From positions 434,001 through 498,000 of the forward strand of contig NW_021832531.1 in NCBI RefSeq assembly GCF_006345805.1: a stretch of 64,000 bases of DNA, in the 5' to 3' direction. Positions 2,988 through 57,659 of this stretch are shown piece after piece. Below the pieces are notes generated by a model. The model was not told the origin of the DNA. It saw only the letters and a list, made by a program, of their open reading frames with translations, and did no database searches. The stretch's first letter is position 1; each line of letters opens with the position of its first letter. This DNA comes from Octopus sinensis (taxonomy: Eukaryota). Both the position numbers and the translations under genes were made by a program.

Positions 2988-3950
2988 TTATAAAAATTTG
3001 TCAATTTGGCTATCAACTGGTTGAAAATAACCATTCGGAGTGAAACGTGGTTCGATCTTGGAAGTGTCAGTATACGTAAAGCTCCGAGTTCCACCCATAT
3101 AATGATACTTTTCATATCGAAAGTCGTCAATAATAAACTGATCTTTCATCAGTGCTATATAGTCTAATTCGAGGCGGAAAGGGCCGTCGATTCCGTCCAT
3201 ACATGTAATTCTGAGTGATTCTACGTCCGTTAACGAAATTTTGTCTTGTCGGTTATTAAGCCTACCTTTCGTACTGTACCAAAAAACGCAAAAAGGAATC
3301 TGCAAATAATTATAAAAAACAACCTTGATGATTTGCCAATATGGACCCCCTCGAGTATACAAAACGTAATTGTTTGTGTCAAACGGATTTACACGGAATT
3401 CTCTGTAAATTGGAAGTGTACACATGTAAGCTCGTCCGTCTCCGCGAATTCGTAGAACCAACGTGTTGAAGTTAGACCAATCATAAGTAGACCTTCTATT
3501 AAATGACTTCTATCAAGATCAGTCAGGGTTTTCGTACAGAGGCTCTTGGAGATGCCAGAGTGCAAAAAGGAGTAGATTCATTCCCAAGGTATGACTCAGT
3601 GCTAAAATATCCTGTAAATATAGCCGTCTTGTTCCCAGAATATTTGACTGTTGCGTTACTCTTTCCAAGTCCGTACATTGAATCACACACAGCTTGCCAC
3701 TCGTCAACTTTATCTGGGCTGTCAAAATTCCATAGTTTTTGATAGTCTCCATGACCGATTTGTTTAAAATTAAAAAGTCGTAACTTATTCACTGTTTCAT
3801 TGAAGAGGACGCCAATTTCTCTTTTAAAAAATTTTAATCGCTCTTTGATCTTGTACGGAACAATTCTCTCATTCACCAAATCAAGAGAATTGCGGTATAA
3901 ATTATTAATTTTAGTCTAAATTCATTATCATGGCCAACACTAAAAACCAT
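2988..3950 (-). CDS. NDUFAF1: Complex I assembly factor CIA30
   Basis: Motifs LWNFDSPDKVDEW, LRIRGDGRAY, TRGGPYWQ and DGPFRLELDYI. Inferred ATG at 3950 followed directly by a 32-nt intron; stop at 2988. Confidence 0.9.
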
Positions 3951-4169: not shown

Positions 4170-5330
4170 TAAGACCTTCGGCATTTCTGCCTTTTCAGTC
4201 CCGCACACACGCTCGCCTCTCAGCCGCAAACTAAGACTTACCGCCTTACCTGCCACCCAGACATTATCTTCTCTAAGACCTCAGGGAGGCCTTTGAGGGA
4301 CAATTCCTGGGTTTCCGAGAGCTCCTCTCGCCATCCTAAGCCATGGGCTAGCCGGATGGCTCGTCTTCTGACTTTCTTGAGCGCGTCAACGTACTTCTCC
4401 CGGTCCTCGCAGAAGTGCCAGGCATGTACGCCAGAGGTCAACACGGGTAACACCATGGCGTTAAACACACGTAGCCAAGCACCTCTCCGCAGCCGGAAAG
4501 CACGCAACGCGCCTAATCGCTGCATTGCACGCATTTTTGTACGTGCAATGTGATCATCAAACTTACAGGGCGGCTTAAAGATCACGCCCAAATAAGTCAT
4601 CCGATCGACTACAGCAATTGCTGACCCGTTCAGCAATAACCTAGGGACGTAATTAGTGTAACCCCTCGTCCTTTTACAGACTTTGAGAACACTGCACTCG
4701 TCCGCACGCATCTTTAGACCCCTACTCCCACACCAGTTTACAAGTCCATCCACAGCAACCTTTAGCCTACGACACGCACACTCAGGTTTCATCGAGTGAT
4801 CCCAGAGGATGATGTCGTCTGCATAAATTACTATTTCAGTACGAGCATTGACTGGCATGGGCGCAGATGCCATAAAGAAATTAAAAAGCGTGGGACTCAG
4901 CACAGAGCCCTGAGGGACCCCGCGAAGGACTGTTCTGACTTTGGAAAAGACCCCCTGATGCCGCACGACCTGTCCGCGAGATTCAAGGAACCCCGACAGC
5001 CAGCGCCTTAGACACGGAGAAACCCCACACGTGGCGAGGGAGCTCCGGAGGCCGTCGTGCCACACCGAGTCGAAGGCCTTTTCAATGTCAAGACTAACAA
5101 CATACCACATTCTTTGTTCTGGAGGGCGCACTTCATCTCAGAAGACACCTTCCATAAGCAGTCTCCACACGAACGACCCTCCCTGAAGCCCCATTAGAAC
5201 TCGGGGAGGGCATCAGCCACCGTCAGCTCCTCCAGGAGCCTTCGGTGCATGATCCCTTCTAAAATTTTAAATACAGCGGGAAGCAAGAAAATGGGCTGTA
5301 TCCCCCGGGAAATTCTTTGATGAACAGTTA
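4170..5330 (-). mobile_element. 5'-truncated APE-type LINE (Jockey/I/CR1 group), RT C-terminal half
   Basis: ORFs 4238-5131 and 5194-5400 carry LDIEKAFDSVWH, GVPQGSVLSPTLFN and YADD. GC-rich relative to flanks. No TSD found. Confidence 0.9.
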
Positions 5331-6225: not shown

Positions 6226-8207
6226 CTAGCTCGGCAGCTCGCTTCGCTCACCGCGACCTAGCTCCTGCGGAGGGCCTGTTTCATCAAACAACTATAAGTT
6301 TATGTAGATGTATAAAACTACCTGGTTTAATGTAACCCTATTCTATCGCCTGTTGATAAACGATGTTTGTCGTCCGTCCTTCCTTGGCATATATGAATAA
6401 ATTTTCTCTTCTGCCTACCCTCGAGCATCCCACATACAGCTGTCCATGTGAAAAGCACTCACTCTCTAAAAATAACCCAACTACCTTTAATGACTGTCCC
6501 TGGGCCTGTTTTATTGTCATTGCAAAACTCATCCTCAAAGGAAATTGCAGCCTTTTAAATCTACATGGTAATTCATCAGAAATTATCGGAATTCGTGGAA
6601 TATAAACATCCTCACCTCTATACTTACCTGTTAATATCGTCGCCTCTATTAAGTTAGCCATCAAATTTTTGATAACTAACCTCGTTCCGTTGCATAATTT
6701 AGGTGGCGCAAGATTTCGTAATAAAACCACTGGAACGCCTATCTTTAACTTTAAAAGATGATTCGGCATTCCAGAGGGATCTAAGGAGTTTAAAATTCAA
6801 TCCGGTTGAATTTTTAGAAAGTAACAAAAAAATAAAGAAAAACAATAAAAATGAATAATTTAAAAACAAAAAAATAAAAAAAAAACAAAAAAAAACTTTA
6901 AAAATTTGTAAAATGGTATAAACAAAAAAATCTCTGCCGCCACGGCAACAACCAGTCTAATTTTTTAACAGCCAATTAAGATAATGCTTAAGAACCTTTA
7001 TAGTCCGGAGATTAGCTTAGTGACCTTGATTAGAGAAACCACTGGCGGAAATGGAGCAGCCAGAGATGCGGCAGGCAGAGTAGCAGCAGCCAAAAAAGCG
7101 ACACACACAAAAAAGATTTAATTAATTACCTTAAGCTGACCGTTTTTTCTTCAGCTTCGTTTTTCCTCCTTCGGTTATCTATTTAAAAAATTATTTTTGA
7201 ATAATAAAAAGTTTAGGAAAGAGGCATACCAAAATAAATTCTATCTTTACGAAAAACTTAACTAAATAGTTAATATTTTTACGCAAATTCTTCTGATTGC
7301 GCTGTCAATTGGTGGTAAATTGTGTTAATGATTGTGCTAATGTGGTTTTAACTATCAAAGTGTTTTTCAAAATCTGTTAATTGCACACTCTATTCAAGGT
7401 CGTGCAATCTGTAATTGCACATTCTGTCAAAGTCAAATATGATAATAGCTTTAATTTTGATTCATGGTCGATAATGATATATGCATTTAATTTTAAAGAG
7501 AAAATCATAGGATGAATTGAATTTCTTTATCGCGAATAATTGGGAGTTCATCTTTGTTAATATTCTCGCTGTCGTTTCATCAAGGATATTCTTAATACGT
7601 GAGATTTTTGCCTCGAGGTTTTAATAGGCCTCATCATGAATGTCGAGGACATTAACGTTGTTCATTTTAATCAAATGCAGAAAATAATTTTTTGATTTTT
7701 TGGCGGGAAGGTTTTAAGGACCTCATCATGTAAGTCGAGGACATCGTAGTTGTTCATTTTAACCAAAATGCAGAAAATTTTTTTTTAATTTTTTTGGGGG
7801 GGAAGGTTTTAAGGACTTCATCATGTAAGTTGAGGACATTGTATTGTTCATTTTAACCAAAATGCAGAAAATTTTTTTTTAATTTTTTTGGGGGGGAAGG
7901 TTTAAAGGACTTCATCATGTAAGTCGAGGACATTGTAGTTGTTCATTTTAACCAAAATGCAGAAAATTTTTTTTTAATTTTTTTGGGGGGGAAGGTTTTA
8001 AGGACTTCATCATGTAAGTCGAGGACATTGTAGTTGTTCATTTTAACCAAATGTGCAGAAATTTTTTTTTAATTTTTTTGGGGGGGAAGGTTTTAAGGAC
8101 CTCATCATGTAAGTCGAGGACATCGTATTGCCAATTTGAAGTTGGTGTGCACACACAGACAGACAGACAGACAGACAGACACACACCATACCATTTTATT
8201 ATTAAGA
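6226..8207 (-). mobile_element. Non-autonomous Helitron with PIF1 helicase 3' fragment
   Basis: Minus-strand 5' end TCTTAATAATAAAATGG at 8207. 3' GC-rich hairpin (GCGAAGC core) followed by CTAG at 6226-6229. PIF1 ORF 6338-6769 ([28 protein letters not shown]). (CAGA)n microsatellite at about 8156-8181. Removing it rejoins pogo codons gat ta|c tgt. Confidence 0.9.
7612..8128. repeat. Tandem array of about 95-bp units (about 5.5 copies) inside the Helitron
   Basis: Unit ggaaggttttaaggacttcatcatgtaagtcgaggacattgtagttgttcattttaaccaaaatgcagaaaattt... recurs about every 95 bp with no spacers. Confidence 0.95.
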
Positions 8208-10135: not shown

Positions 10136-12220
10136 AGAATAGAATAGAATAGCGTTTATTGAGCGAAAAGAAAAACAAAGAAGAAATCATCGGCGGGGAG
10201 ATAAAAACAAAGCACCGAAGTGTCTCTTTCCATGCGTATCCCCAATACTAGTCATGTTTGACGACAATTCTCCAAGACCATCCGGATCGTGGGCACAGAG
10301 GATTCTTGTGAGTCTTTTAACCTTCCGTCAAGTTGTACTCCGTAAGCCAATTTCATAGCGAAACGTCTTGTCTTTTCAACTGTTCGATCAGGTAGTCACT
10401 CTCCTCCGTACCGTACCAGCCCTCGTAGCCATATGTGAGGACTGGCTGCACACACGTTTTGTATACGTAGATGTACGTTTCCGGATCCAGATGGAACCTG
10501 GTTAAGCTTTTGAGGATCCTCACACTCCTCTTTCTCTGATTTGCTATATGCTCTACGTACGAGCCACGACAGTTGATGGTTGCTCCCAGGTAAGAAAGAT
10601 TTTTGCTTTTCGGAGATCCATCACATAGCTACTCATCGCATATGCACACGACTCCGCATAGCGACTCCCTCTCCGCAACCATGAAATGGTGCTCTTCTCC
10701 GGTGCTAGGGTCAAACCCTTCTCTATAGTCCACATCTTTAGCGTTGCAATGTATGATTTCAGTCGTCTCCAAGACTGCGATATCCTTTTCGAGGTATCCA
10801 TGACCAGGATATCGTCAGCATAGATAACGAGCTTGCCAGTACGTGTCGACGGCAGAGGAATGCCGCAAACGATGTGATAAAGATGACTATGAATGTTACG
10901 GAGGACTTGTTCATTGGTTACAATTTCGTGAACATGAACTGGAGTTTATTCGAATCATATATGCGGGATTCTCTTCGAAATGTCGTGTCCCAGCCTCTGA
11001 GAAGCAGAGATGATATTGACAATCTCGATGATCACCTTAGATCGTCAATCATAAAATTCCTGGATGTTTATGCATTAAAAAATGTATGGAAACCCAAAGT
11101 AACGCAAAAGCGGATGAATTCGAAACTTGTCACTCTGATCAGAACGAAAGGTACCCTGGAAAATCGCAGGAGAAGATGTCGGGTTGAGTCAATCAAATGC
11201 CGCCTGAAATTGGAGATCGACAAGATAAAATCTACTATTGCAAAAATGGCCAAGACTGAGGTCGAAAGTAAATGGAGGTCTGAATGCAGAAAACTGGATA
11301 AGCGAAACCCTAATTTCTGGAAAGCATATCAACGCCTTACCAGAAATGATGCCAAAGGATTTGAAATTTCACTAAAAGAACCAGACGGAAAATATATTCC
11401 TCTGATCGTATCCCGGAAGTACTCAGGAACCAACTTAGTCAGGTTCAAGAGGTCGAATCTACCGTTCCACGAGGGACTTATGACCGAATTGTGAAGAAGC
11501 TTGGCTCTTCGCAATTATCGGAGGGACCATTATGTGGGGCGATAACACAGGAAGAGGTTGAAAGGGCAATTGCTGGGTTGAAGAACAAGGCGCCTGGCTT
11601 CGACTACATCCCTCCGAAGTTGTTAAAGAAGGCCCCTGAAATCTTGATACGAGCATTGACTATGTTGTTTCACGCCAGCTGGACGTTCGGGCACCTTCCA
11701 TCGGCGTGGAAGCATACGATTGTTCGAATGATTCCAAAATCTGGTAAATCGACACTGCTGGCACAGAACTACCGGCCAATTAGCCTCATTTGTGCTTTCT
11801 CTAAGAAAATGGAAAAGATTGTCTTTAACAGACTCTCTGGTCATATAGAGTCACAAAATTTGCTTTTACCCGAACAATGGGGATTTCGTGGAGGAAGATC
11901 CACAGGGGACTGTCTCAGGGAGTTAGAGCACCAATTATCCCGTGCTGACAGAAATGAAGCATGGCTAACTGTGGTTGTGTCTGGATCTGGCCAAAGCCTT
12001 CGATAGCGTGTGGCACCTGGGCCTACTCTCCAGAATCCATGACATCGGAGCCGGGATAAAGACCTATCGATGGCTGGAGAGCTTCTTGTCAGGAAGACAA
12101 TCATTTGTCCGCTGGGAAACCGCCTATCGGGGTGTGTGGAACTTAGAAGGGAGTCCCGCAGGGATCTATCTTGAGTCCACTTCTGTTCAACCTCTTCTTG
12201 GCGGACATTCCTCTGCCGTC
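10136..12220 (-). mobile_element. APE-type LINE with inverted 5' segment
   Basis: The 3' part is on the minus strand (YADD at 10809-10824, (CTATT)n tail at 10136-10151). The 5' part is on the plus strand (10874-12220, RT up to LADIPLPS). 12-bp TSD gatacagacact at 10124-10135 and 12221-12232. Confidence 0.92.
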
Positions 12221-17104: not shown

Positions 17105-20064
17105 ATGACAGGTAAAAAAAGGAAAAGTACAAAATTATTAATCACATGTTCCCAATGCGGCGCACAGACTTTCGACGAAGAAAGACATAACGCATCTTTT
17201 GGGGAAAATTCTAACCACGAAATAATTTCTTCAACTTTCTCTGTTCCATTTATCCTCAATCAACGCCTTTACACGTCTCAGGTAGTCATTCTTCCTATTG
17301 GTAAAAAATTTGACTGATTTTTTTAGAAAAAATGCGAACTTTTAGTGCCTTTTTTACTGATTTTATTCTCTTAAATCCAGAAACCATGAGACAGTGTGGA
17401 CTAATTATTGGCTCACAGTGTCGTATTGTGACATATGAAGGAATGGAGGAAAGGATTGTTTTTGTCTTTGCTGATGTGGATCTTATTTCTCCTTTGGTTG
17501 TTGGCTGTCCTCCTGGTTGTGGATATTCCGGGCCCCTTATGGTGTCTTGTATTGATCAATCGACATTGACATCCACCCATCTCAGACTGACACCAGAAAT
17601 GTATTTTATTATTATTTATTTTAAAGAAATAATAAAATTGACGATGACATTATTTCGCATGTTAAATATAGATTGGGTATCCTCATTTTGTAATACATTT
17701 AGCGGGAACTTACATACTTTCCGGAGTATCAAAGTCTTTTTGGTATTTTGGAAATAATATTAAAATGTTAATATCTGACATGACCAAAACAAAATCTAAT
17801 TTGCCAGATGACGACACTGCTAGTACTATCATGCCAAACTCAGAAATATCAACTGAAGTCACTTCTGAATTTTTTTCGGCAGTTTCTGAATTGGAGTCTT
17901 CATTGGTCGACGATACTCTTCATTTATCGAACAATACTTCTCATCTATCGAACAATTTGGAATGCTTTGAATCGCAACTTGCAGGATTATTTCCAATGGT
18001 GAACAAAATTGTGTTTATTGACGACAACACAATTTTCAATTTTGAAGTTGAAGACGAAGAAGAAGACCATTTGGAGACTAATTTGGACAGTATTGGAGGA
18101 ATGGAAGACTCGGTTGATAAAATCATAAAGATTTTGCAGTATTTTTATTCTGATGCTCCAAGTTTTTGTCGAATAGTTTTGATGTTAAGGTTATGGAAAA
18201 AATGGCGGAATGCTAATATTTGGTCCTCCTGGATGTGGGAAAACGAGTTTAGTATTGTCAGTTGCCGGTCATTTGCACATAAAAGTTTTCATACTACAAG
18301 GGATGCACATATATAAGTAAGTTTCTTTAATTTGTATATATGTAATCATAAAAATGATTTTTAATTATTTCTAGTCGGAACAAATTTGAAGATGAGATGA
18401 ATAATGTCTTTACTAAGGCTTCTTCTGCCAAAATGTCGCTAATTTTGGTCGAAGATGTTGAATATTTAGCGAATAAAAAGTCTGAAACCGATTTTCAAAA
18501 ATTGTTGAAATTGGGATTTTTGTCGCGATTTGAGAATATTTTGAAATTTGTTGTTTTTTAACTCATAAAAATGTTAGAAAAAAATTTTTGTGGTTTGTAC
18601 GACTAATCAAGTGGATTTGGTGGACTTGTTTTTGAGAAGAAAGTTGGAGTGCGAATTGGAAATCCCTACTCCTAATTCTAAAGAAAGATATAAAGTTTTT
18701 AGTCCATTTTTGTTATTTTTAAGATTTTTGATAAATGTTTATCCTATCTACCCTCGCCCTGCATATACGGTAAAGAACAGGTGGAAGCAGTGGCTGATAT
18801 CACCTGTGGTTATGTCGCGGGAGATATTTTGGCTGTTTGTCGTCGAGGTATTTTATTTTTTTAAATTTTAAGCCTTCAGGGATTCTGTTATTTCATTGGA
18901 CGGCTACCATCAATTGGATTTGCTGGAAGCTGTAAAGTCAGTGAAACCAAGTTCGATGAAAGAATTGGCTTTGGACGTTCCGAAAGTATAATTATAGTAC
19001 TACTGTCCTAGATCAAGTGGAGTGATATTGGTGGGTTGGATAAAATTAAAAATGGAGTAAGACAGTTGGTTGAATGGCCAATTCTTCATCCGGAGGTTTT
19101 CTCCAGACTGGGGATTAAACCTCCGAGGGGGATTCTGATGTATGGTCCTCCTGGATGTTCAAAGACGATGATAGCCCAGGCTATAGCAACGGAATCTCAT
19201 TTTAATTTTATAAGCGTTAAAGTAATATATAATGAAGGATAATAATGACAGGGATCGGAATTATTGAGCAAATATGTTGGAGACTCGGAAAAGATGGTCC
19301 GTCAGTTGTTTGCAAAAGCCCGTGCTGTATCTCCTACAGTCGTGTTTTTTGACGAGATTGATGCACTTGTTCCCACTCGAGGAAGTCATTCTGTGACTGA
19401 TCGTGTGCTGGCTCAGTTGTTGACTGAGTTAGATGGAGTTGTTGCCTTAAATCAAGTCGTATTTGTTTCAGCTACCAACAGACCTGATATGATAGACAAT
19501 GTTATGAGTTTTTGAATAATTGTAGGCTTTATTGAGACCAGGGAGAGTTGATAGATTGATTTATGTCCCTTTGCCTGATGAGGCGAGCCGAAGGAGGATT
19601 TTTGACCTACAATTAAGATCAAAGCCATTGGGAAGGGATGTTCTGTTGGGGGATTTGGCTCGATTTACAGAAGGTTATTCTGGTGCAGAGGTATTTTGTG
19701 GGTTTCTAATTTAGGTTGTGGCGGTGTGCCAAGAGGCTGCCATGGAAGCACTAAGTGAGAACATAAATGCCAAATTTACTGAAGAAAGACATTTTTTATC
19801 CGCTTTGAACAAAATAAAACCCCGAACTGATGAAAAGATGCTGGAAATTTATCGAAAGTTTTCTGGTTTGGTTAATTTGTACCTAAAATAGAATCTAACG
19901 TCGGTTCTGAGATTTGCTTAGAAAATGATTCGGAAAATAAGGAATCTGGTCCGGTTGTAATGGATAATTCAACCAGCTCTTTTTCTGGAACAAAATATAT
20001 ACTGACAACTATTTTGGGCATCGGGATAACTGCAACCATATTAATATTTTTTAAATTGAGATAA
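17105..20064 (+). CDS. AFG2A: AFG2/SPATA5-type double AAA+ ATPase; stop at 19891 if the last intron is retained, at 20064 if spliced
   Basis: D1 GPPGCGKT with degenerate Walker B (LVEDVE). D2 [34 protein letters not shown] and [15 protein letters not shown]. Confidence 0.85.
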
Positions 20065-25011: not shown

Positions 25012-26455
25012 TATATGTGATTAAGACTTTGTGCAATAGAGTTGCGTCACTAACTCAACCGAAATACCATACCGCCTATTGGGAAAGGAACGCTAATTCC
25101 TCTCCAAAAACCCAACAAGCCGCAAGGTCCTCTTAACAACATTCGCCCAATCATACTCTTGAACACAATAAGGAAAATCTTCTCACTCGTAACACTGGAA
25201 CGTATTAAGGACCCTGTTAATGAATATCTGTCGGCTAGCCAAAGTGGATTCAGGCCTGGGCGATCAACTGCAGATGTAGTATGGGGACATAGATGGATCT
25301 GTGCCATATCTCAGAAATTTAAAATGGCGACCACAATATTGGGCATTGATATGAGCAGGGCATTTGATACAATCCGCAGAGACAAGCTAATGGAGATCCT
25401 CAAAACCATTCTTGACAATGACTCGATCAGAATGGTTCGAGCACTACTTATAGACACCGAGTTAACGGTGAAGATCGGACCCGTAGAATCAAGATCTTTC
25501 AAAACAAGCATTGGAACGCCCCAAGGTGATTCAATATCACCTGTACTATTCATTGTCTATCTTGAAGCGGCACTAAGAGATCTGAGAAAACTAGTGAAGA
25601 CTACTTCAATAACTGAAGTGATATATGCCGACGATGTAGACTTTTTGTCTCATGATAAGTCGACACTCGAAGAACTGCTGAACATTGCTCCTCATGCACT
25701 GGAAAAATGGTTCTTAAAAGTGAACATAGAAAAAACCGAATATGTAACAATCAACCGGGAGGCAAATAGAACAGACGAAAAATGGCGAAACTCAAAAAAG
25801 TTGGAACTCTTTTAGGAGATAGTGAAGACATTATGAGGAGAAAGATGCTATCGACTGTTGCACTTAACAAACTGCGGACCACTTGGCTACGAAACCGCGA
25901 GGTTGGAACGGCCTTACGTGCCAAATTATACAATGCTTTTATTAAACCCATACTTTTGTACAACGGAGGAACATGGGGAATATCTGAGTCTGAATCAAAA
26001 TCTCTTGATGCATTCCATAGAAGACAGTTAAGAATTCTTATTGGCATCAACTGGCCAAAGAAAATCAAGAACTCCACCCTATACAATATCTGCAACAGCA
26101 GACCCGTCAGTGTGGACATTACCGAAGCACGTTGGCGCCTATTGGGCCACATTCTAAGACTCGACCGGGATGTTTATGCTAACTGGGCAATGGAATCATA
26201 TTACGCAAAGGACGAAAGATCTGCGTCCCGAGGACGCCCACGAAATACATTACCTATTGTAATCTCAAAAGAACTACAACGCGTTAAAAGACAACTGAAA
26301 AATGGAGACGACCTAGATACTCTCAGGAGTATAGCATACAACCGCACATCATGGAAAATTATGACCGAAAAGATAGTCTCATATGTGGCACATGTGGGAA
26401 CTTAATTAGTTTAAATTACATTATGTTCCTATGACAGTGCTAATAATAATAATAA
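25012..26455 (+). mobile_element. 5'-truncated RTE-superfamily LINE (the dominant family in the window)
   Basis: SGFRPGRST, DMSRAFDT, PQGDSISP, YADD and RWRLLGHILRL. (TAA)n tail. 13-bp TSD tatttcatatcta at 24999-25011 and 26456-26468. One frameshift near 25790. Confidence 0.93.
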
Positions 26456-26833: not shown

Positions 26834-27905
26834 TTAGTTAGGGTAATCGAGTCCAATTTTAATTTCTGCTTCAAGGAATGGCAATGCCAAGTCTATCATT
26901 GTTTGTTGTTGTTCGGTCAGGTCAGGCAGAGGAAGAACTTGTTCTATTCCCTCTCGACCAAAACGAACAGGCGATGCGAAATATGGCAAATTGGTAATGT
27001 CAGACCGCACATACGCACATTCCACGACGTCGGGCACTCCACTAAGCCCCGAGAGGACTGCTTTTGAAACCCGAAGAGCAGCCACAGCAATGGCGAGAGT
27101 AGCCGAGCCCTAAACAACAAGCATAACAAATGTACTTTTCCTTGCTTAGCGTTCAAAACAACCGTCCCAGCCTCCCTGATCTTCAGGCAGAGGTCCTCGA
27201 TTTGGGTAGGAGAAAGATTTCCGTCATTTATGAGTGCAACGATTGTGGTTTCCGAATGTCCACACACACTCATACTGGTCACTTCAGAGGGCTCAATACC
27301 CTAGAACAAAAATAAAGCAATCAACAATAAACCAAAGTCTCAGAAACAAACGTGACAGTTCTTTGAACATCCAGAGTCGTAACCCCAAATATCCGTTGTG
27401 ATGCATCTATTCCTAAACGATCCATCAATTTGACTGCCAAGGGGACCAGTGAATTGACCTACAGAGGTCACTGAGTGGAGTACTGGATTGGTAATAATTC
27501 CGACTATTGCAAAAGGGCAGTAAAGTGCAATCCCGGTGATCAGAGACTCCATTATTTTAGAATTAGCCACAAATAAATCAGCTCTTGTGGTTCCTGAAAA
27601 TTAATCAACAATAAACCTGGAACTCCCTTTTCCCCCGCACAAATAATAACTAAATCCATTCCTGAGAGAGCTCCTTCTAATTCGTCAGGTCCTTTGAATG
27701 CTTTTACTAAACAATTTGTTGGGATATGAGACAGATCTTCTGCAACTCCAGCAGGATCAATGATATCCAATAAGTTCAGTTGACTTATTACATCACTTTC
27801 AAGTTTAAAGAGAAGACTCAAAGGTTGGCCTATTCCTCCATTTGCACCAAGAATAGCAACTTTATACTACAAATTTATCAAGAAGTGATTATCTACTTTC
27901 GACAT
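26834..27905 (-). CDS. MDH2-type (mitochondrial/bacterial class) 2-hydroxyacid dehydrogenase, atypical
   Basis: Spliced MSKYKVAILGANGGIGQPLSLL, DLSHI, ITNPVNS, GVTTLDVQR, GHS and GSATL. Five tiny introns (23-32 nt). Active-site loop reads AGEKGVPGTTRADLF. Confidence 0.9.
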
Positions 27906-28029
27906 TAAAAAGCTTATTTAATTTGATTTTAAGTTATTTTAGCTCAAATTTAACACAAAATAAAGTCAAAAATACATTTAATTATTTTTGTATAAATAAT
28001 CTATATTGTAACTTTAAAACTAATTAATT

Positions 28030-29194: not shown

Positions 29195-31100
29195 TCATTT
29201 AGAAGAAAACCAATTATTCAGATTGGACTCTGTTCTTCGCCGAATACACTTGGGTCCATCATTTCTTACATTATTAACAAACTTATCAACAGGACGATTA
29301 GAAAAACGGCAGGTCCCGTTCAAACAACGCTCAAAAGCCTGTAAACATAATTTCTTCAACATTACAGCACTGTCACTATAAAGAGACACATTCAGCCAGT
29401 CCTCAGCATCCTCTGATGTCAGCAAAGCCTGATTAATGTCAGTCAAAAATACAGGCATTCGATGGTGGATTTTGTCCATGTCTGGACCTGCCTCCATAGT
29501 GATGACTGAAAACACGAATTCGTCGACAGATTGACTTCCATTGAGGACAACTCCAGCCATCAGGAGTAGTGGCCATTCTAAACAAAATAATCTCCTCAGT
29601 AAAAAAACCTTCGATGGTATCGTTTTTAACCGCCTGGTCGTAAAATAAATAAGGCATTCTCCCCTCCGGCGTCGATTTCCATTCGTAAAAACTAACAAAT
29701 GCAAAAAAGTATTCTACCCGTCAGCAACTACCACGCATCGAATTAATCCGTTAAAACTTCCATTTTTTGAACTTATTTTTGACAATAATGTCTCCTTTCT
29801 GAAATTATTCCGTGTATTTGGATACTTTCTGTCCTCACTTGGACGATAGCCCCAACTGAAGTTTAGTTATGTTAGACAAACTGCATCTGAGTGAGTGCAC
29901 AGTCACCTTTCCGGTACTTTTGTCGAAGTGGTCGCAGTTTTTTTAGGCCTTTTAAAAAATCTAATAATTTTGAGGTGGAATATATTATATTTTATTTAAG
30001 TCGCTCTATCAATAATTTAAAATATTATTAAATTTTTACTAATTTATTTTCTAATTTTTTTAATATTATGGCGAGCATGTACCTAATATTGATATAAACT
30101 GGCACTATAGGTCACATGGAAAATTCTGTTGTGGACTTATGCAACATCAAATTCCGACAGCTCCAATAAGTAAGGAGGATGCAGTGCATTTTCTGCAAAA
30201 TGTGGATATCCTTTCAAAATCACGTATATGTCCGAAGGGACATCAGATGGAATTAGTCTTGGGACCGAAGCTCAATTGGAAATGCTCAAGAGTTGGTTGT
30301 AGAGTCCAATGTTCTATTAAAAAAGGTATAATTTCTCTCAAATAATTCTAGATACCTGGTTAGAGAATTGTAGATTGCCATTTGAGGATGTCATCGCCTA
30401 CATATACTTATGGAGTTACGATAGGCATACCTTCAAATGGCTTCATCACGAATACAATTGGGGTGAACATACATATGTCGATGGGCTATGTTTTTACGTG
30501 AAGTCTGTGTGGACGCACTTGTTAAAAGATCTGACGGCAAAATTGGTATTATTAATGTTTATTTCAGGTGGTCCTGGTATGATTGTGGAGGTAGACGAGA
30601 GTATGTTTTCCAAACGGAAAAACAACTCTGGAAGAGTTTTACCAAAACAGTGGGTCTTCGGTGGTATTTGTCGATTAGTTATTTTTTCAGAATTTATGTG
30701 GCGAAAACAAATACAGAACTATAAGGAATCTTTTGCACAGATTGTAAAAGACATAAATTCCTTCTACAGTCCTGGAATTTGGATGCCGCGTACTAAAAAT
30801 GACTAAATTGGTTAAATAAATTTTTAAATAATTTTAATAACCATTTAAATTATTGATAGAGGGTTATAAATTAAATAATCTATTTTTCACTAAAAAAATT
30901 AATTAATTTTAATTATCTTCTAAAAAAACTGCGACCACTTCGACAAAAGTACCGCCTGCCTTTCCTGAAAGATGAAATTTTTTGTGTTTTTAAATTCAGA
31001 TTTTTATTAATTGATTCAAGTTTTTTTATTATTTCTTCGGGTGAAGAAAAACTAAATTCATTAAAAATTTTATTTCGCACCACATAATACGGCCACACAT
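29195..31100 (-). CDS. HMCES: HMCES/SRAP abasic-site protector, interrupted by a Merlin element
   Basis: MCGR start at 31100 (Cys2), MHWG, RCVVVADGFYEW, LLMAG, IHHRMP and VNNVRN. No stops or frameshifts apart from the insertion. Confidence 0.88.
29912..30956 (+). mobile_element. Internally deleted Merlin transposon
   Basis: Perfect 33-bp inverted repeat at 29912-29944 and 30922-30954. Imperfect 9-bp TSD (cacctttcc / tgcctttcc). Transposase pieces CPKGH and VEVDESMFSKRKNNSGR...WVFGG. Introns at 30326-30351 and 30546-30567. Confidence 0.9.
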
Positions 31101-33154: not shown

Positions 33155-34328
33155 TTAGTTTTCAACCCAATCGAGGATGTCCTGTGCGAAGTAGGTTATG
33201 ATTAGATCAGCCCCTTTGGCTGAGATATGTACAATGAAACCTGCTCGTCTGTAAGCTGTAAGGAACTCGAATAGGACGTCTCGTTCTTGGAGATTGCTAC
33301 TCTCAGCAAATTTTTTGATCATTGTGTATTCCCCAGATGTCTGATAAGCGGCTAAACAGTACTGAGGGTACTTGGAAATGTTTAAATAGTGATTTACTTT
33401 TGATTTTATACGATAAATATTGTCGAGATTCACCATGGCTGGTTTGATTATTAGCATGTCGGTCCCCTCTTCAATGTCCCTTGCCTATTGGACTAAGACT
33501 ATGAAATACTGCTGCTCTCAGAGCCAGTCCGGCAGACCCGGCAGGATGCTGGTAAGTTGATCTGTCAAAGTAGAGAGGAGTACTGCCAGCGGCGTCCCTA
33601 AAAATATTACAAATTATGTGCCTGAATTGGCTATATAGATTGGAGTGGTGCTTCACTGAATAGCTCATAACAGCCACGGAAGAACGCAGATCCGCCGAAA
33701 TTAAATTTTCAGAAATAACAGCGACTCGTCCATCCCTCATATCCGACGGAGCCACGACATGACAGCCCGCTTGTGCATATGCCAGTGCAATTTCTCCCAG
33801 TCGGCGAATACTCTGAGAGTTATTAATGCTTGAATTGTTCTGTTGGTCAATGATTCCTGACCATAATTTAATAAAGCAATACCACAATGGCCATGTGATG
33901 TGTAACTGCAGACACATACGTCGCAAATCACTGCAAGTTGTGGAAAATGTTTTGTGAGTATTTGAGTCGCACGTACAACAGGGGATTCGGGACTGTCAGC
34001 ATTGCTCGCCAAATTGTCTTTTTTAAGTCTTTTCAAGGCCCCAAACAACAAAACTGATTTTAATCCTTTTTGCACAAGTGGTTCAATGCGGTTTGCAATA
34101 TTTTCGATTGAATAATATGTCAGAGGCGGCATGGATTTGATTGGCCCGTCATCGTGAGGCACGTCGCTGTGAACGTTACATAAAGGAATGCCTTATAAAA
34201 ATGGGATATATTATATTTTCGGGACTTATTCTGGTATTGACTGTCTGCCAATCACGGACGACACGGTTGAAATAGGAAGGAATTATGTATTTTGAGGGAC
34301 TTGAATAACACCGAAAAATATTTATCAT
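33155..34328 (-). CDS. ALAD: Delta-aminolevulinic acid dehydratase (porphobilinogen synthase), zinc-dependent type
   Basis: IIYPIFI, DVCVCSYTSHGHCG, VVAPSDMRDGRV, MSYSVK, IIKPA and AAYQTSGEY. First intron is GC-AG (34167-34191). Confidence 0.93.
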
Positions 34329-37727: not shown

Positions 37728-38395
37728 ATGGCTCTTGTGGTAGTTATAAGACATCGAGTTATTCATTTATTATAGAAGGAAGAAAACCCAATGAGAGAAG
37801 TCAAGATTGCCAAGCTCTGTCTTAATATTTCTGTTGGTCAGTCTGGGGATAGATTGACGAGAGCGGCCAAAGTAATGGAACAACTGACTGGCCAAAGACC
37901 TCGCTTTTCAAAAGGTCTGTTTCATATTCTCATTATTCCAAACAGCCAAAATAACAATCCGTAAGTTTGGTATTCGCAGAAATGAGACAATCGCCTGTTC
38001 TACCACAGTTCGTGGTCCAAAAGCAGAACAGATCCTCGAATCTGGTCTCAAAGTCAAGGAATATGAATTATACAAAAAGTGTTTTGCTCAAGACGGAAGC
38101 TTCGGATTTGGAATCGAAGAGCATATTGATTTGGGGGTAAAATATGATCCCAACATTGGCATTTACGGAATGGATTTTTGTGTTGTTTTGGAGAGGAAAG
38201 GTAGTTTAAATAATTTACTAATCATTATTTAGGGTATCGAGTGAAGAGGAGGAGGCGTGGTTGTGCCAGAGTTGGTGCTAGTCATCGTGTGTCTAAGGAA
38301 GACGCGATGAAATGGTTTAAACAGAAGGTCCCCCGTTTTGATTATTTTTTCCATAGTTCGACGGTCATGTAATTCCTAAGAAGAGGAAAAATTAA
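37728..38395 (+). CDS. RPL11: 60S ribosomal protein uL5 (not in the ORF track because of four tiny introns)
   Basis: [38 protein letters not shown] and [23 protein letters not shown] ends at 38395. Confidence 0.95.
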
Positions 38396-45464: not shown

Positions 45465-46252
45465 ATGAGGTTGTTTTGTTTTCTTGACATTAAAAAAAAT
45501 TATCTTATTAAATTTTTTAAATTAATTTAGCAAAATAAATTTGAACAACTTGAAATCAAAAGTGAACAAGGTACTTGAAAAGTCCGAGGAAAAAAAGCGA
45601 AACTTCTTGGAGACCATTGAACTTCAAGTCCTGCTCAAAGGATATGACACAACGAGGGATAAGAGATTCTCTGGAGTTGTAAGGTACATACAAGGTATTT
45701 ATTCCTTCAGACTTCGACACGTTCCAAGGCCGAAGCTACGAGTTTGTGTAATCGGGGACGAGGAGCACATTAAACAGGCGAAGGAACTCGGGATTGATGG
45801 CGTGAACATAAACCAAACAAGTCTCCTCGCTCAAAATCCTAGGGAGAAAAAAAAATTTGGTTTAAAATTAAAAATAATTTAAGTCAAAAAATATTCTGGA
45901 TTTATTGTCACTCAAGATTTGATGAGAACAGTGACTCGTCATCTTGGTCCTACTCCTTCGAGGTACGGCAGGTTGGTGTTTGCCATAAACCCGAATGAGA
46001 CGGTTATTTCTCGAGTTAATGATCTGAGGGCCTCGATAAAGTTTCAGTTGAAAAAAGTTTGTTTTTTTTGTTTATTGTAAGGTCAAAGTATTGAATACTG
46101 CAGTTGCCAATATTGGTATGAGTGAGAAAGACATTTGTGAGAATATTATCATGGCCACTAATTTTCTTGTATCACTTACAAAGAAGCAGTGGCAAAATGT
46201 GGGCGCTCTCTATATTAAATCAACTATGGGTCCTTCCCAGAAAATATATTAA
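45465..46252 (+). CDS. RPL10A: 60S ribosomal protein uL1, divergent
   Basis: ATG AG|intron, KKRNFLETIELQV, YDTTRDKRFSG, IKFQLKK, KKQWQNV and KSTMGP. Confidence 0.92.
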
Positions 46253-52786: not shown

Positions 52787-55700
52787 TCTGTGTATAGAAT
52801 CAAACGCCCGAGACATATTAATGCCTAGTATTGCGATAGATTTTTCGTATTTTTGGCATAGAGCGCAGTACCATCTGTGCCTCCAAACTATATTAGCAGT
52901 AGACCTGCCTGTACAAAAACCACTTTGGCCAGGGGATAGGAATTTGTTAGCTTTTTATCCGGTGTAATGGGATGAGGGATAATGTTTTACGTATGGAAGT
53001 TAGTAGAATTATTGGTCTAAAGTTGCAAACGGGGTCTTTAGCTTTCCCGGGTTAATGTAATGGGATTAGCCATCCTTTTCCGAGAGCCAACGGATTATCT
53101 TCCTGAAGAATAAGATTAAAAACATCGGTGATTATTTTAGCTAGCTCCACTGGTGCGTGTTTTAAAAGTTCTGTCGGGATATTGTCTGGTCCTGCGGATC
53201 TTCCGGTGTTCAACTTTTTAATATCTTGCAGAATTTCCGAGAGACTTATCGGGTTTGTTAAGTGGAATTGTCAGGTTTTAAAATTCAGTGTTGATCAGTT
53301 TTAGTATACATATTGAATAGGGAATCAAAGTGCGAAGCTAGAATACAGTCCGACCCCAAAATGGGGCAGACCCCAGGGGTGGGGCACCCTCGGATTTTGG
53401 GGCACCCCCGCAATTTGGGGCACTTTATTCCAAAAGTACATTTTGGCAGAAAAAAAATAAAAATCGATAAAAAATTATGGAATTTTTGGGGCACCATAAA
53501 ATCATTTATAAGGAATTAAAAATAAAATAAAATTATAATAAATTAATTATTTTTTGTTTTATTTTCAATTTATATTTTTATTGTTGTGGTTATGGATTAC
53601 GAAACTAAATTGAAGATTGCTAAAGAAATTTTGAAGAAAAATTTATCTGAGAGGCAACTAATGAAAAAGTACAACACAAGTAAAGGAACAATATCAAGAA
53701 TAAAACGAAATATTGTACCTTTCTTGCAACACGGCAATACTATTTCTGAGGAATATGACACATTTAAAGCCGATAAAGATAAATTTGATGATCAAGTCTT
53801 TGAAATATTTCAAAGACTACGCGTAGATAAAATTCCGATTTCAGGCCCTATTTTGAAAAAAATTGCCTTAGTTACAGCTTCAAAAATTGGATTTACTTCT
53901 TTTAAAGCTTCCAATGGGTGGCTTGATAGATTTAAATTGCGGCATGAACTTCAATTCAAGTCAATATGTGGTGAAAAAGCTTCATGTGATTTATCTTATG
54001 TGAAAAATTATTTTGAAAAATATGACCAGAAAGTATTAAATATGGACCTGAGAATATATTTAATTGTGATGAAACTGCGCTTTTTATAAAAAGAACTCCT
54101 CAAAAATCATTTGTTGAACAAGGCGAACCGTGTTTTGGTTATAAACAAGGGAAAGAAAGACTCACTGTTCTTCTATGCTGCAGTTTAATCGGGGAAAAAC
54201 TTAATCCATTGATTATTGGAAAATATAAAAACCTCGGTGTCTAAAAAATTTTGATGTTCAAGATTTTGGGTTATTGTATTCATCTTCTCAAAATGCATGG
54301 ATGACTGGAAAGACTTTTATGAGTTGGCTTACACTTATAAATGAATCGTTTTGCAAAAACAACAGAAAAATATTATTAATACTTGACAATGCGGGATGCC
54401 ATAAAACTGCCGAATGTTCGAACATCGAATTTTTATTTTTGCCGAAAAATACAACGCCCTATTTACAACCTTTGGATATGGGAATAATCAAGATTTTTAA
54501 AGATTATTATTCCTCTTTCTTAATGGAATTTTTATGTTTTCAAGATTTCGAAAACGATTTTACACATTCTATTGGTAAATTAAATTTGCGTCAGGTTATG
54601 ATGCTAATTTCAAAAGGATGGGAGAAAATAGATGCTAAAAGTATTGTTAATTGTTGGAAGAAAATCGACAGGAACCGTGATTCTTATGCAACAAAAAACT
54701 GTCTAACAGATGAACATTTAGATCAAGTTTAACGAAACAATTGATGGAAGAATGCGAAGACATGAACAATAATGTTTATGATACATATTCAGAAACCGAA
54801 AATAGTGAAAAGTCGTAGCAAAAACAAAAGATCTGCTTAACAATTTAGAAGAAAAAATTTCTAATGTTGCACCAAGTATGCTCCGAGATTTTTTTGATTT
54901 TCGGCTGAAATTGACGAACAATATCAGACAAAACTCTACAAATAAAAAGAAAATAACTGAATATTTTAGTAAAAATGTTTTTGATGTTTATTAATGGTTT
55001 AATTTTTAAAAAAATAACAAACCCCTGTTTTTGGGGCACCCCCGCATTTTGGGGCACTTGGTGCCCCATTTGGGGGTCGGACTGTACTAGCTTTTTCGAC
55101 GTCCTCGGTAACTGTACGATCGAGATTATGAATGATAGGGGCCCTGTTGAGGATGCGAATTGCTTTAAACATCATTGGCCGTGTTTGTATTTCATTATTC
55201 GGAAACTTGTTTTTCTGCTTCACTTTTGGCAAGAAATTTTTGTAATTGTTTCATCTTTGTTAATACTCTACCTCTCTGCGTACAGAGTTCTTTGATTTTC
55301 TCTGTGTTTTCCGATTGTAGTCTGAGTTCTTTTTGTATTAGAGAAAGTCGTCCGATTTCTGGACTACTTTGTTTGTGTCTCGATCCGTGTGTGGAACCCA
55401 AGACGTCAGACGAGGTATTCCGTATTGCGGTAACTGTTTCCTCCCAAATCTTGTTAGCTGGTTGATTTTAGTAGATACAGTCGATGCTGTTTTTCAGGGT
55501 CGTACAATATCGAAGATTGGTGGACTCTTCGTATCCAAGCCTCTCCGTATCGTATCGTGCTGGTGAGGTGCCTTTGAGCTTTTCACGTATTCCATGGATT
55601 CTGTACAGCATTAACTGAGCCACAAGTTTATGATCGCAGCTGGTTAAACCCAGTCCAGGTGATTTTCATTTATAATAAAGAGCACTGAGTTGAGACTTTT

Positions 55701-57620: not shown

Positions 57621-57659
57621 AAATACATACTATAGAAAATGCATACGATCTATACCATT

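What the first reader, a model, noticed from the sequence alone, without database searches (positions are those of the whole stretch)
27560..27905. MDH2-type enzyme lacking the malate-specificity arginine and the presequence: candidate independently evolved LDH-like dehydrogenase
Seen: after removing a 23-nt intron (27594-27616), the active-site loop reads AG-EKGVPGTTRADLF. This aligns without gaps to E. coli MDH AG-VARKPGMDRSDLF, so Arg81 (LDH position 102) is Gly (codon 27624-27626). Arg87, Asp150, Arg153 and His177 are retained. The protein starts MSKYKVAILG with an in-frame stop just upstream, so there is no mitochondrial presequence, and it ends YPN with no PTS1. Known: position 102 determines oxaloacetate versus pyruvate preference. 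MDH-derived enzymes with this residue changed include Trichomonas LDH, apicomplexan LDH and the T. cruzi aromatic hydroxyacid dehydrogenase, none of which came from the mitochondrial MDH2 class. Inference: a cytosolic, neofunctionalised MDH2 paralogue, possibly serving anaerobic NAD+ regeneration in a parasite.
Basis: partly seen in the sequence, partly recalled or inferred. Interest (0 to 1): 0.85.

Follow-up and report, generated by a model that had tools for sequence, protein, structure and literature searches.

The report
Dicyemid parasite MDH2 lacking specificity arginine
An intact gene of a dicyemid (a tiny kidney parasite of octopus, co-assembled into an octopus genome) descends from animal mitochondrial malate dehydrogenase. 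It has lost both its mitochondrial targeting exon and the arginine that recognises oxaloacetate, so it probably works on another 2-oxoacid, but this is untested.

Summary
The minus strand 27905-26834 carries a six-exon, 311-aa gene with GT-AG introns of 30, 23, 25, 32 and 26 nt. Removing the 23-nt intron (27616-27594) gives the loop AG-EKGV-PG-TTR-ADLF. Arg102 (E. coli Arg81) is Gly84 (codon 27626-27624). Arg90, Asp153, Arg156, His180 and Asn122 are kept. The protein starts MSKY, with a TAA five codons upstream, and ends YPN.

New findings:
- The window is contig VCDQ01002911.1 of the Octopus sinensis assembly, but the DNA is from a dicyemid.
- Four of the five tiny introns sit at exactly the positions of Lottia MDH2 introns (three also in bird). 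The fifth corresponds to the intron behind the presequence exon, here cut to three codons.
- The closest homologue is the public Dicyema japonicum 'malate dehydrogenase' (50% identical). It also lacks Arg102 (Lys), so the loss is older than this gene.
- Dicyemid proteins diverge fast in general: a neighbouring ALAD gene is changed at 17% of conserved columns, against 28% here.
- There is no overall convergence on LDH.

Verdict: real, probably cytosolic, and probably shifted away from oxaloacetate. An LDH-like function is plausible (Cryptosporidium LDH also has Gly102) but unproven.

The parts
26834..27905 (-). Whole coding region of the MDH2-derived dehydrogenase gene (6 exons, 936 nt CDS, 311 aa + TAA)
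   Evidence: Splice model and translation. Pfam Ldh_1_N + Ldh_1_C. TIGR01772 286 bits.
27897..27905 (-). Exon 1: ATG TCG AAA (MSK). Remnant of the presequence exon.
   Evidence: In Lottia and bird MDH2, exon 1 encodes a 22-24 aa presequence and ends 2 alignment columns away, in the same phase 0. NCBI model P0121 uses the same start and intron.
27918..27920 (-). In-frame TAA five codons upstream of the ATG
27867..27896 (-). Intron 1, 30 nt, GT-AG
27617..27866 (-). Exon 2: Rossmann fold, GANGGIGQ, Asp37, and the start of the active-site loop
27624..27626 (-). Codon GGA = Gly84, at the position of Arg102 (LDH numbering) / E. coli Arg81
   Evidence: The column is Arg in 75/75 canonical MDH2s.
27571..27638 (-). 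Active-site mobile loop A80-F94 (AGEKGVPGTTRADLF), interrupted by intron 2
27594..27616 (-). Intron 2, 23 nt, GT-AG, phase 1 in the Gly87 codon
   Evidence: Same alignment column and phase as introns of Lottia (273 nt) and bird (968 nt) MDH2.
27484..27593 (-). Exon 3, including Arg90 (27585-27583) and Asn122 (27489-27487)
27459..27483 (-). Intron 3, 25 nt, phase 0 (P123|V124). Position conserved in Lottia and bird.
27333..27458 (-). Exon 4, including Asp153 (27371-27369) and Arg156 (27362-27360)
27301..27332 (-). Intron 4, 32 nt, phase 0. Position conserved in Lottia and bird.
27136..27300 (-). Exon 5, including catalytic His180 (27258-27256) in the motif CGHSE
27110..27135 (-). Intron 5, 26 nt, phase 0 (K220|G221). 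Same position as in Lottia; bird differs by one base.
26834..27109 (-). Exon 6, including Ala226-Ile227 (27094-27089; Ser-Met in MDHs), C-terminus ...DYPN and TAA

Best explanation
This is an intact gene of a dicyemid mesozoan, a parasite of the octopus kidney whose DNA was co-assembled into the Octopus sinensis genome. It descends from the animal mitochondrial malate dehydrogenase gene (MDH2).

The exon that encodes the mitochondrial presequence in other animals is reduced to three codons, so the enzyme most likely stays in the cytosol.

The NAD-binding site and the full hydride-transfer machinery are kept: the His180-Asp153 pair, Arg90 on the closing loop, Arg156 for the substrate's C1 carboxylate, and Asn122. 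The arginine that clamps the second (C4) carboxylate of oxaloacetate is Gly84. Its neighbour Lys is Val85, Met106 (LDH numbering) is Thr88, and the pocket pair Ser-Met is Ala-Ile.

The pocket is therefore less positive and more hydrophobic. The most likely working is an NADH-dependent 2-oxoacid reductase whose preference has moved away from oxaloacetate towards 2-oxo-monocarboxylates (pyruvate or bulkier ones). That is an LDH-like or 2-hydroxyacid dehydrogenase that can reoxidise cytosolic NADH.

The loss of Arg102 predates the split from the D. japonicum homologue, which has Lys102.

Shown: gene structure, ancestry, residue states, shared loss. Inferred: localisation, substrate, physiological role.
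For: - Gene model and residues.
- MDH2 ancestry: 4/5 introns at Lottia MDH2 positions, 3/5 also in bird, and intron 1 next to the presequence-exon boundary. TIGR01772 hit.
- Dicyemid source: contig of GCA_006345805.1. Eleven introns of 21-32 nt in two genes. Only dicyemids and myxobolids have such introns among animals (PMC13644364). The host of D. japonicum is O. sinensis (PMC6736024). The nearest homologue is D. japonicum MDH BAH29733.1, pairing with it in 200/200 NJ bootstraps.
- Shared loss of Arg102, and 24 shared deviating columns with D. japonicum, while both keep the reading frame and catalytic residues at 50% mutual identity. This points to long-term constraint on catalysis but not on the oxaloacetate clamp.
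- Arg102 is the specificity residue. Gly102 occurs in Cryptosporidium LDH. In an ancestral MDH, R102K cost more than 100- to 2500-fold in oxaloacetate activity, and the four residues found at position 102 in the convergent LDH families (Gln, Lys, Gly, Leu) each raised pyruvate activity (PMC4109310).
- The three top-ranked MDH/LDH discriminating positions (Ec R81, M85, M227) are all changed, M227 to the LDH residue Ile. V214 (one of five changes that turned E. coli MDH into an LDH) is Leu (PMC12461433).
Against: - No enzyme data, and no transcript found.
- The lineage is fast-evolving. The neighbouring ALAD deviates at 16/93 conserved columns against 29/105 here (Fisher p = 0.09), so much of the divergence is not specific to this gene.
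- There is no general convergence on LDH: 3/28 deviations equal LDHA, against a background of 16/127. G210, T211, A223 and I15 stay MDH-like.
- The loop is not conserved between the two dicyemid sequences (3/12 identical; read off the alignment). This fits relaxed constraint as well as a new specificity.
- A Lys sits in the loop of both (K83 here, K at 102 in D. japonicum) and might partly replace Arg.
- D. japonicum has a 12-aa basic N-terminus, so at least one dicyemid form may still be mitochondrial.
Confidence: 0.45

Rival explanations
1. It is simply the dicyemid orthologue of MDH2, still working as a (less efficient) malate dehydrogenase. A loop lysine (Lys83 here, Lys at position 102 in D. 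japonicum) takes over part of Arg102's role. The rest of the divergence is the lineage's general fast evolution.
For: - Both dicyemid sequences keep a Lys in the loop.
- ALAD on the same contig also deviates at 17% of conserved columns.
- It still passes the TIGR01772 equivalog cut-off (286 vs 273).
- Most MDH-type positions (G210, T211, A223, G179, I15) are kept.
- There is no overall LDH convergence.
- The D. japonicum form has a basic 12-aa N-terminus.
- A complex I assembly factor on the contig suggests respiring mitochondria that would need an MDH.
Against: - R102K alone cost more than 100- to 2500-fold in oxaloacetate activity in an ancestral MDH (PMC4109310).
- Here position 102 is Gly, 103 is Val, and the Lys is at 101, which from my own recollection points to the NADH pyrophosphate in LDHs.
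- No presequence in this gene.
- Canonical MDH2s score 420-486 bits on the same model.
- ALAD kept every catalytic residue, whereas this protein lost one.
Confidence: 0.3
2. It is a decaying or non-catalytic relic: a gene under relaxed constraint in a shrinking parasite genome, or a pseudoenzyme kept for a structural or moonlighting role.
For: - 29/105 conserved columns are changed, against at most 6 in any of 75 other MDH2s.
- The loop, normally invariant, differs at 9/12 positions between the two dicyemid sequences.
- No transcript-derived copy is in the protein collection.
- The family score is borderline.
Against: - A 936-nt frame with five correctly phased tiny introns is intact in a 65% A+T genome.
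- Every residue of the hydride-transfer machinery and the NAD site is kept in both dicyemid sequences despite 50% divergence.
- D. japonicum BAH29733.1 is probably one of the 40 genes of Ogino et al. 2010. Both that origin and the idea that those genes were cloned from cDNA come from my own recollection and were not checked. If right, the D. japonicum copy is expressed.
Confidence: 0.13
3. The protein is still mitochondrial. An alternative upstream first exon, or an internal or uncleaved signal, imports it, so the 'cytosolic' part of the reading is wrong whatever the substrate.
For: - Phase-0 ATG...GT mini-exons exist upstream, e.g. MSSIRRRWLKTKISDYFFE at 28367-28311.
- The D. japonicum homologue starts MRKVLKLLNSSF.
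- Dicyemid mean intron size (38 nt) exceeds the median, so longer introns exist (PMC6736024).
Against: - Those exons need introns of 226-444 nt, against 21-32 nt for all 11 introns seen here.
- The conserved intron-1 position is already occupied by the MSK exon.
- NCBI's model also starts at MSK.
Confidence: 0.12

Closest known systems
Dicyema japonicum 'malate dehydrogenase' (BAH29733.1 / UniProt B9ZYX0; P0254)
   Same: Closest relative: 50% identity, sister in 200/200 bootstraps. It has the same 5-residue deletion after the catalytic His. It shares 24 deviating conserved columns, nine of them to the same residue, including Met227->Ile. It has no Arg at position 102 and a hydrophobic residue at 103. 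The catalytic His/Asp/Arg109/Arg171 are kept.
   Different: Position 102 is Lys (loop LE-NGKI-TG-HTR) rather than Gly. It is even more divergent (38% to canonical MDH2, 41/105 conserved columns changed). It has a 12-aa basic N-terminal extension, where the window gene has MSKY. Whether the two are orthologues from distant dicyemid species or old paralogues could not be decided.
Animal mitochondrial malate dehydrogenase MDH2 (e.g. Lottia gigantea P0078, bird P0012; PDB 1MLD, 2DFD, 4WLE)
   Same: Same fold and clade (TIGR01772). Same intron positions (4 of 5 with Lottia). Same NAD site and catalytic residues. 45-49% identity.
   Different: No presequence (exon 1 = 3 codons). Arg102->Gly, Lys103->Val, Met106->Thr, Ser-Met->Ala-Ile. 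29/105 conserved columns changed. Model score 286 against 420-486 bits.
Cryptosporidium parvum LDH (PDB 2FN7, 4ND1), an LDH that arose from an MDH
   Same: Gly at the specificity position 102, with the catalytic Arg109/Arg171/His195/Asp168 retained (PMC4109310, PMC11461325).
   Different: It arose from an alpha-proteobacterial 'LDH-like' MDH, not from the mitochondrial-like clade. Only about 20% of the score of MDH2 hits (74.5 bits). Its LDH activity is measured; here nothing is measured.
Trichomonad LDH and Trypanosoma cruzi aromatic 2-hydroxyacid dehydrogenase
   Same: MDH-derived enzymes of parasites that lost MDH activity through change at or around position 102 (Leu in trichomonads) and serve in the cytosol (PMC4109310, PMC11461325).
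   Different: Both derive from the cytosolic-like MDH clade. There is no specific sequence similarity to the window protein beyond the superfamily.
Unnamed mitochondrial-like MDH homologues with non-Arg at 102 in sequence collections (P0352 Gly; P0309, P0338, P0366 Gln; P0379 Ile; P0359 Met)
   Same: Same clade, with the specificity arginine replaced. P0352 also has no presequence and shares ICAG...G102...TRADL with the window protein.
   Different: Otherwise canonical active sites. Unknown organisms (metagenome and Logan contigs). Not close relatives of the dicyemid pair. All uncharacterised.

Membership tests
Mitochondrial-like NAD-malate dehydrogenase (TIGR01772 MDH_euk_gproteo; animal MDH2) | Ldh_1_N + Ldh_1_C two-domain fold | tested here: met
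   PF00056 2.3e-31, PF02866 3e-25
Mitochondrial-like NAD-malate dehydrogenase (TIGR01772 MDH_euk_gproteo; animal MDH2) | Score above the curated equivalog cut-off | tested here: met
   286.2 bits against a cut-off of 273.05, which is marginal. Four canonical members score 420-486.
Mitochondrial-like NAD-malate dehydrogenase (TIGR01772 MDH_euk_gproteo; animal MDH2) | Catalytic His-Asp pair, Arg109, Arg171, Asn140; GxGxxG and Asp for NAD | tested here: met
   H180, D153, R90, R156, N122, G10/G13/G14/G16, D37
Mitochondrial-like NAD-malate dehydrogenase (TIGR01772 MDH_euk_gproteo; animal MDH2) | Arg102 (E. coli Arg81) binding the C4 carboxylate of oxaloacetate | tested here: not met
   Gly84. The column is Arg in 75/75 canonical sequences.
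Mitochondrial-like NAD-malate dehydrogenase (TIGR01772 MDH_euk_gproteo; animal MDH2) | N-terminal mitochondrial presequence (animal MDH2) | tested here: not met
   Four residues precede the first beta-strand. TAA five codons upstream. No nearby upstream exon.
Mitochondrial-like NAD-malate dehydrogenase (TIGR01772 MDH_euk_gproteo; animal MDH2) | Descent from the animal MDH2 gene (shared intron positions) | tested here: met
   Columns 166 (phase 1), 202 (0) and 247 (0) are shared with Lottia and bird. Column 307 (0) is shared with Lottia. Intron 1 lies 2 columns from theirs.
Mitochondrial-like NAD-malate dehydrogenase (TIGR01772 MDH_euk_gproteo; animal MDH2) | Malate/oxaloacetate activity | not testable with these tools
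   Needs an enzyme assay.
MDH-derived L-lactate / 2-hydroxyacid dehydrogenases (functional class: Cryptosporidium, apicomplexan and trichomonad LDH, T. cruzi AHADH) | Non-Arg residue at specificity position 102 with the catalytic machinery intact | tested here: met
   Gly84, as in Cryptosporidium LDH
MDH-derived L-lactate / 2-hydroxyacid dehydrogenases (functional class: Cryptosporidium, apicomplexan and trichomonad LDH, T. cruzi AHADH) | LDH-type residues at other discriminating positions | tested here: inconclusive
   I227 and A226 are LDH-like and L214 is near LDH Ile. G210, T211, A223 and I15 are MDH-like. Overall 3/28 deviations equal LDHA, against a background of 16/127.
MDH-derived L-lactate / 2-hydroxyacid dehydrogenases (functional class: Cryptosporidium, apicomplexan and trichomonad LDH, T. 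cruzi AHADH) | A canonical MDH paralogue retained in the same genome (duplication then neofunctionalisation) | not testable with these tools
   Only the 64-kb window and 20 kb of the contig are readable. No second copy in the window.
MDH-derived L-lactate / 2-hydroxyacid dehydrogenases (functional class: Cryptosporidium, apicomplexan and trichomonad LDH, T. cruzi AHADH) | Pyruvate or other 2-oxo-monocarboxylate reductase activity exceeding oxaloacetate activity | not testable with these tools
   Needs an enzyme assay.

The most novel reading that the evidence does not exclude
Dicyemids carry a fifth independent conversion of a malate dehydrogenase into an LDH-like 2-hydroxy-monocarboxylate dehydrogenase. 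It would be the first inside Metazoa and the first from the mitochondrial-like MDH clade. It would date to before the split of the two known dicyemid sequences and be coupled, in this gene, to loss of the presequence exon and relocation to the cytosol. If no canonical MDH2 exists in the genome, dicyemid mitochondria would also run without a classical malate dehydrogenase.
Probability: 0.22. Interest if true: 0.8.

Novelty: new variant of a known kind. Interest (0 to 1): 0.55.

Why it matters
The MDH/LDH superfamily is a textbook case of how one residue controls substrate choice. Four independent MDH-to-LDH conversions are characterised, none in animals and none from the mitochondrial-like clade (PMC4109310). 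A dicyemid enzyme with Gly102, and a sister sequence with Lys102, would give a new natural pair for testing how the switch happens in a different background.

It would also say something concrete about the energy metabolism of one of the most reduced animals known, for which no biochemical data turned up in the papers I searched.

Practically, the result shows that a 500-kb contig in the Octopus sinensis assembly GCA_006345805.1 is dicyemid DNA. Genes on it are annotated as truncated 'Octopus' proteins because gene callers do not splice introns under 30 nt.

Tried and rejected
1. Alternative splicing restoring Arg. The Gly codon lies 8 nt upstream of the donor. Using the GT at 27623 as donor, or leaving the intron in, runs into a stop. 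Rejected.
2. Upstream presequence exon. None is within tiny-intron reach. Candidates need introns of 226-444 nt. Not excluded, but unsupported.
3. Genuine octopus gene. Rejected. All 11 introns are 21-32 nt, and no hit listed for either MDH or ALAD exceeds 51% identity. I did not confirm that cephalopod MDH2 or ALAD sequences are in the database searched.
4. Myxozoan source (the other animals with introns under 30 nt; PMC13644364). Rejected by the host assembly and the D. japonicum sister sequence.
5. Ciliate of the renal sac. Rejected. TAA is used as a stop, the introns are at animal positions, and the best hits are animal.
6. General convergence on LDH. Tested and not found.
7. 'Divergence is unique to this gene'. 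Tested with ALAD from the same contig and only weakly supported (28% vs 17%, p = 0.09).
8. AlphaFold model of the spliced protein.
9. Exact look-ups of the spliced MDH and ALAD proteins and of P0254's gene. Nothing on record.
10. Rfam and tRNA scans of the window. Nothing.
11. The word-indexed homologue searches missed the D. japonicum sequence, which only the full HMMER scan found. Their 'no close relative' result should not be trusted.
12. Literature on dicyemid energy metabolism or MDH. Nothing found.
13. Phytomonas glycosomal 2-hydroxyacid dehydrogenases as possible prior art inside the mitochondrial-like clade. I recalled this from memory only and could not verify it in the library.
Full report
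**What is there.** The finding lies on the minus strand. Reading that strand and splicing five GT-AG introns gives a 936-nt reading frame of 311 codons plus TAA. The introns are 30, 23, 25, 32 and 26 nt, at 27896-27867, 27616-27594, 27483-27459, 27332-27301 and 27135-27110.

The protein has the two lactate/malate dehydrogenase domains. It passes, narrowly, the NCBIfam equivalog model for the mitochondrial/glyoxysomal/gamma-proteobacterial malate dehydrogenases: TIGR01772, 286 bits against a cut-off of 273. Canonical members score 420-486 bits. The best solved structures are glyoxysomal, bacterial and mitochondrial MDHs at about 1e-75 to 1e-71.

**The observation.**
- The loop is A80-G-E-K-G84-V-P-G-T-T-R90-A-D-L-F94. 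It aligns without gaps to E. coli MDH A77-F91 (the E. coli sequence was verified against PDB 2PWZ).
- Gly84 (GGA, 27626-27624) replaces Arg81 of E. coli, which is Arg102 in LDH numbering.
- Arg90, Asp153, Arg156, His180, Asn122, the glycine-rich NAD motif and Asp37 are kept.
- The ATG at 27905 is preceded by an in-frame TAA five codons upstream. The protein ends DYPN.
- The column of Gly84 is Arg in 75 of 75 canonical relatives.
- Without removal of the 23-nt intron the frame stops after 107 residues. That is exactly the truncated protein NCBI annotated (P0121).

**Are the tiny introns real?** I mapped the exons of Lottia gigantea and a bird MDH2 onto their genomic loci and placed all introns on one protein alignment.
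- Three window introns fall in the same column and phase as introns of both species. These are the 23-nt one in the Gly87 codon (phase 1), P123|V124 and L165|G166.
- A fourth (K220|G221) matches Lottia exactly and the bird within one base.
- The first intron, after Met-Ser-Lys, lies two alignment columns from intron 1 of both animals, in the same phase. In them that intron separates a 22-24-residue presequence exon from the mature protein.

So the splice model is right, the gene descends from the animal MDH2 gene, and the presequence exon has shrunk to three codons.

**Where the DNA comes from.** A search with the N-terminal part returned a 100% identical 107-aa protein named 'malate dehydrogenase, glyoxysomal-like [Octopus sinensis]'. 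It is encoded on the 500-kb contig VCDQ01002911.1 of GCA_006345805.1.

The DNA is not octopus.
- All eleven introns I modelled in two genes are 21-32 nt.
- No hit listed for either MDH or ALAD exceeds 51% identity. I did not confirm that cephalopod sequences are in that database.
- Among animals, introns under 30 nt are known only in myxobolid myxozoans and in Dicyema japonicum (PMC13644364).
- D. japonicum lives in the kidney of O. sinensis and has a 36.7% G+C, LINE-rich genome (PMC6736024). The window is about 35% G+C and full of reverse-transcriptase fragments.

**The closest relative changes the picture.** A full HMMER scan of 1.84 billion cluster representatives found one sequence clearly closer than the canonical MDHs: BAH29733.1 / B9ZYX0, 'malate dehydrogenase [Dicyema japonicum]'. 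The two word-indexed searches had missed it.
- It is 50% identical to the window protein and only 38% to canonical MDH2s.
- It groups with the window protein in 200/200 neighbour-joining bootstraps.
- It has the same deletion after the catalytic histidine and the identical stretch IEPSEVTS.
- It shares 24 of the window protein's 29 departures from conserved columns, nine to the same residue.
- Its loop reads LE-NGKI-TG-HTR-SSLF. Position 102 is Lys and 103 is Ile, so again there is no arginine.
- It begins MRKVLKLLNSSF before the first strand, a short basic extension that the window gene lacks.

I could not decide whether the two are orthologues of distant dicyemid species or old paralogues. 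Either way, the loss of Arg102 predates their split. Both have since kept an open frame and every catalytic residue.

**How unusual is the divergence?** The protein departs from 29 of 105 columns that are at least 95% conserved. No other of the 75 MDH2s departs from more than 6. The changes cluster in three places:
- the loop (82-85, 88, 91);
- around the catalytic histidine (PVIGGHAG to MSVCGHSE);
- helix 205-227, including Ser-Met to Ala-Ile.

As a control I modelled the neighbouring porphobilinogen synthase (ALAD) gene (34328-33155, six tiny introns) and made the same count. It departs from 16 of 93 conserved columns, and all catalytic lysines and zinc cysteines are kept. So the lineage evolves fast in general. 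The MDH is only about 1.6-fold worse (Fisher p = 0.09). The special point is the loss of one functionally critical, otherwise invariant residue, not the overall divergence.

**What the residues suggest.** Arg102 clamps the C4 carboxylate of oxaloacetate and is the classical specificity residue (PMC11461317). The four known MDH-derived LDH lineages carry Gln, Lys, Gly (Cryptosporidium) or Leu there. In an ancestral MDH each of these raised pyruvate activity, and R102K cost more than 100- to 2500-fold in oxaloacetate activity (PMC4109310).

The three top-ranked MDH/LDH discriminating positions of a recent classifier (E. coli R81, M85, M227) are all changed here, M227 to the LDH residue Ile. V214, one of five changes that turned E. 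coli MDH into an LDH, is Leu (PMC12461433).

Against this:
- Only 3 of 28 departures equal human LDHA, no more than the background rate of 16/127.
- G210, T211, A223 and I15 stay MDH-like.
- The loop differs at 9 of 12 positions between the two dicyemid sequences. That fits released constraint as well as a new specificity.

**Best reading and rivals.**
- Best reading (0.45): a probably cytosolic, NADH-dependent 2-oxoacid reductase derived from MDH2, whose preference has moved away from oxaloacetate towards 2-oxo-monocarboxylates.
- Main rival (0.30): it is the lineage's ordinary MDH2, working less well, with a loop lysine helping.
- Decaying or non-catalytic relic (0.13): less likely, given the intact frame, splice sites and catalytic set in two sequences 50% apart.
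- A mitochondrial location through an alternative first exon cannot be excluded. It would need an intron of at least 226 nt.
A complex I assembly factor (CIA30) gene lies on the same contig.

**Novelty.** No characterised LDH-like enzyme comes from the mitochondrial-like clade (PMC4109310). The D. japonicum sequence is already in the public protein databases, but I found no paper mentioning its missing arginine. Sequence collections also hold several unnamed mitochondrial-like MDH homologues with Gly, Gln, Ile or Met at position 102. So the phenomenon is wider than one gene and is unstudied. I rate it a new variant of a known kind.

Noticed in passing
whole window (contig VCDQ01002911.1 of GCA_006345805.1; L001): The 500-kb contig filed under Octopus sinensis is dicyemid DNA. 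NCBI's gene models on it are truncated because introns under 30 nt are not spliced. For example, P0121 stops 21 codons into the 23-nt intron read-through.
   Followed up: partly
window 33155-34328 (-): Porphobilinogen synthase (ALAD) gene with six introns of 21-27 nt. Two of them are GC-AG (34191-34167 and 33621-33598). The GC-AG reading is the only one that keeps the alignment to other ALADs free of indels. The best hit is a nemertean at 51%.
   Followed up: partly
window 27616-27594 and 27332-27301 (-): Introns 2 and 4 of the MDH gene start with the same 14 bases (GTTTATTGTTGATT). This could be chance in A+T-rich DNA or a sign of intron copying.
   Followed up: no
window 2988-3879 (-): Two ORF pieces match CIA30 (complex I assembly factor NDUFAF1). 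This implies that complex I, and so a respiring mitochondrion, is retained in this organism.
   Followed up: partly
window 4238-5131 (-), 11491-12006 (+), 25159-26405 (+), 55829-56194 (+): Several reverse-transcriptase (LINE-type) fragments, some in G+C-richer patches (8-12 kb at 44-46% G+C). One ends about 430 nt downstream of the MDH stop codon. The 55829-56194 ORF was identified by eye from its translation, not by Pfam.
   Followed up: partly
window 6338-6769 (-); 53586-54732 (+): A Pif1-type helicase fragment (Helitron-like), and a Tc5/pogo-type transposase (HTH_Tnp_Tc5 + DDE_1) split over two ORFs.
   Followed up: partly
window 37776-38300 (+); 45541-46250 (+); 29195-29704 (-): Ribosomal protein L11 (Ribosomal_L5_C), ribosomal protein L10a (Ribosomal_L1) and an SRAP/HMCES-like gene. 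All are apparently split by tiny introns. The models were not completed.
   Followed up: no
window 7616-8127; 57304-57767; 62414-62674: Tandem repeats: 95-nt unit x5.4, 21-nt unit x15 (read as an LIPVSLT-type repeat ORF), and 127-nt unit x2.
   Followed up: no
window 18001-20000: A strong local G-over-C skew (+0.26), unlike the rest of the window.
   Followed up: no
L002 1-89 and L004 1-51: In both Lottia and bird, MDH2 lies head-to-head with a DSPc/rhodanese (STYXL1-like) gene. That neighbour is absent upstream of the dicyemid gene, where the next gene is SRAP/HMCES.
   Followed up: no
P0352 (L006, ENA ERZ1694383), P0309, P0338, P0366, P0379, P0359: Unnamed mitochondrial-like MDH homologues from metagenome and Logan contigs carry Gly, Gln, Ile or Met at position 102. 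P0352 also lacks a presequence and shares ICAG...G102...TRADL with the window protein.
   Followed up: partly
tool behaviour, vs 70: The word-indexed homologue search missed the 50%-identical D. japonicum sequence, probably because 8000 canonical MDHs share more 5-mers with the query. Absence of close hits in that tool is weak evidence for divergent queries.
   Followed up: yes
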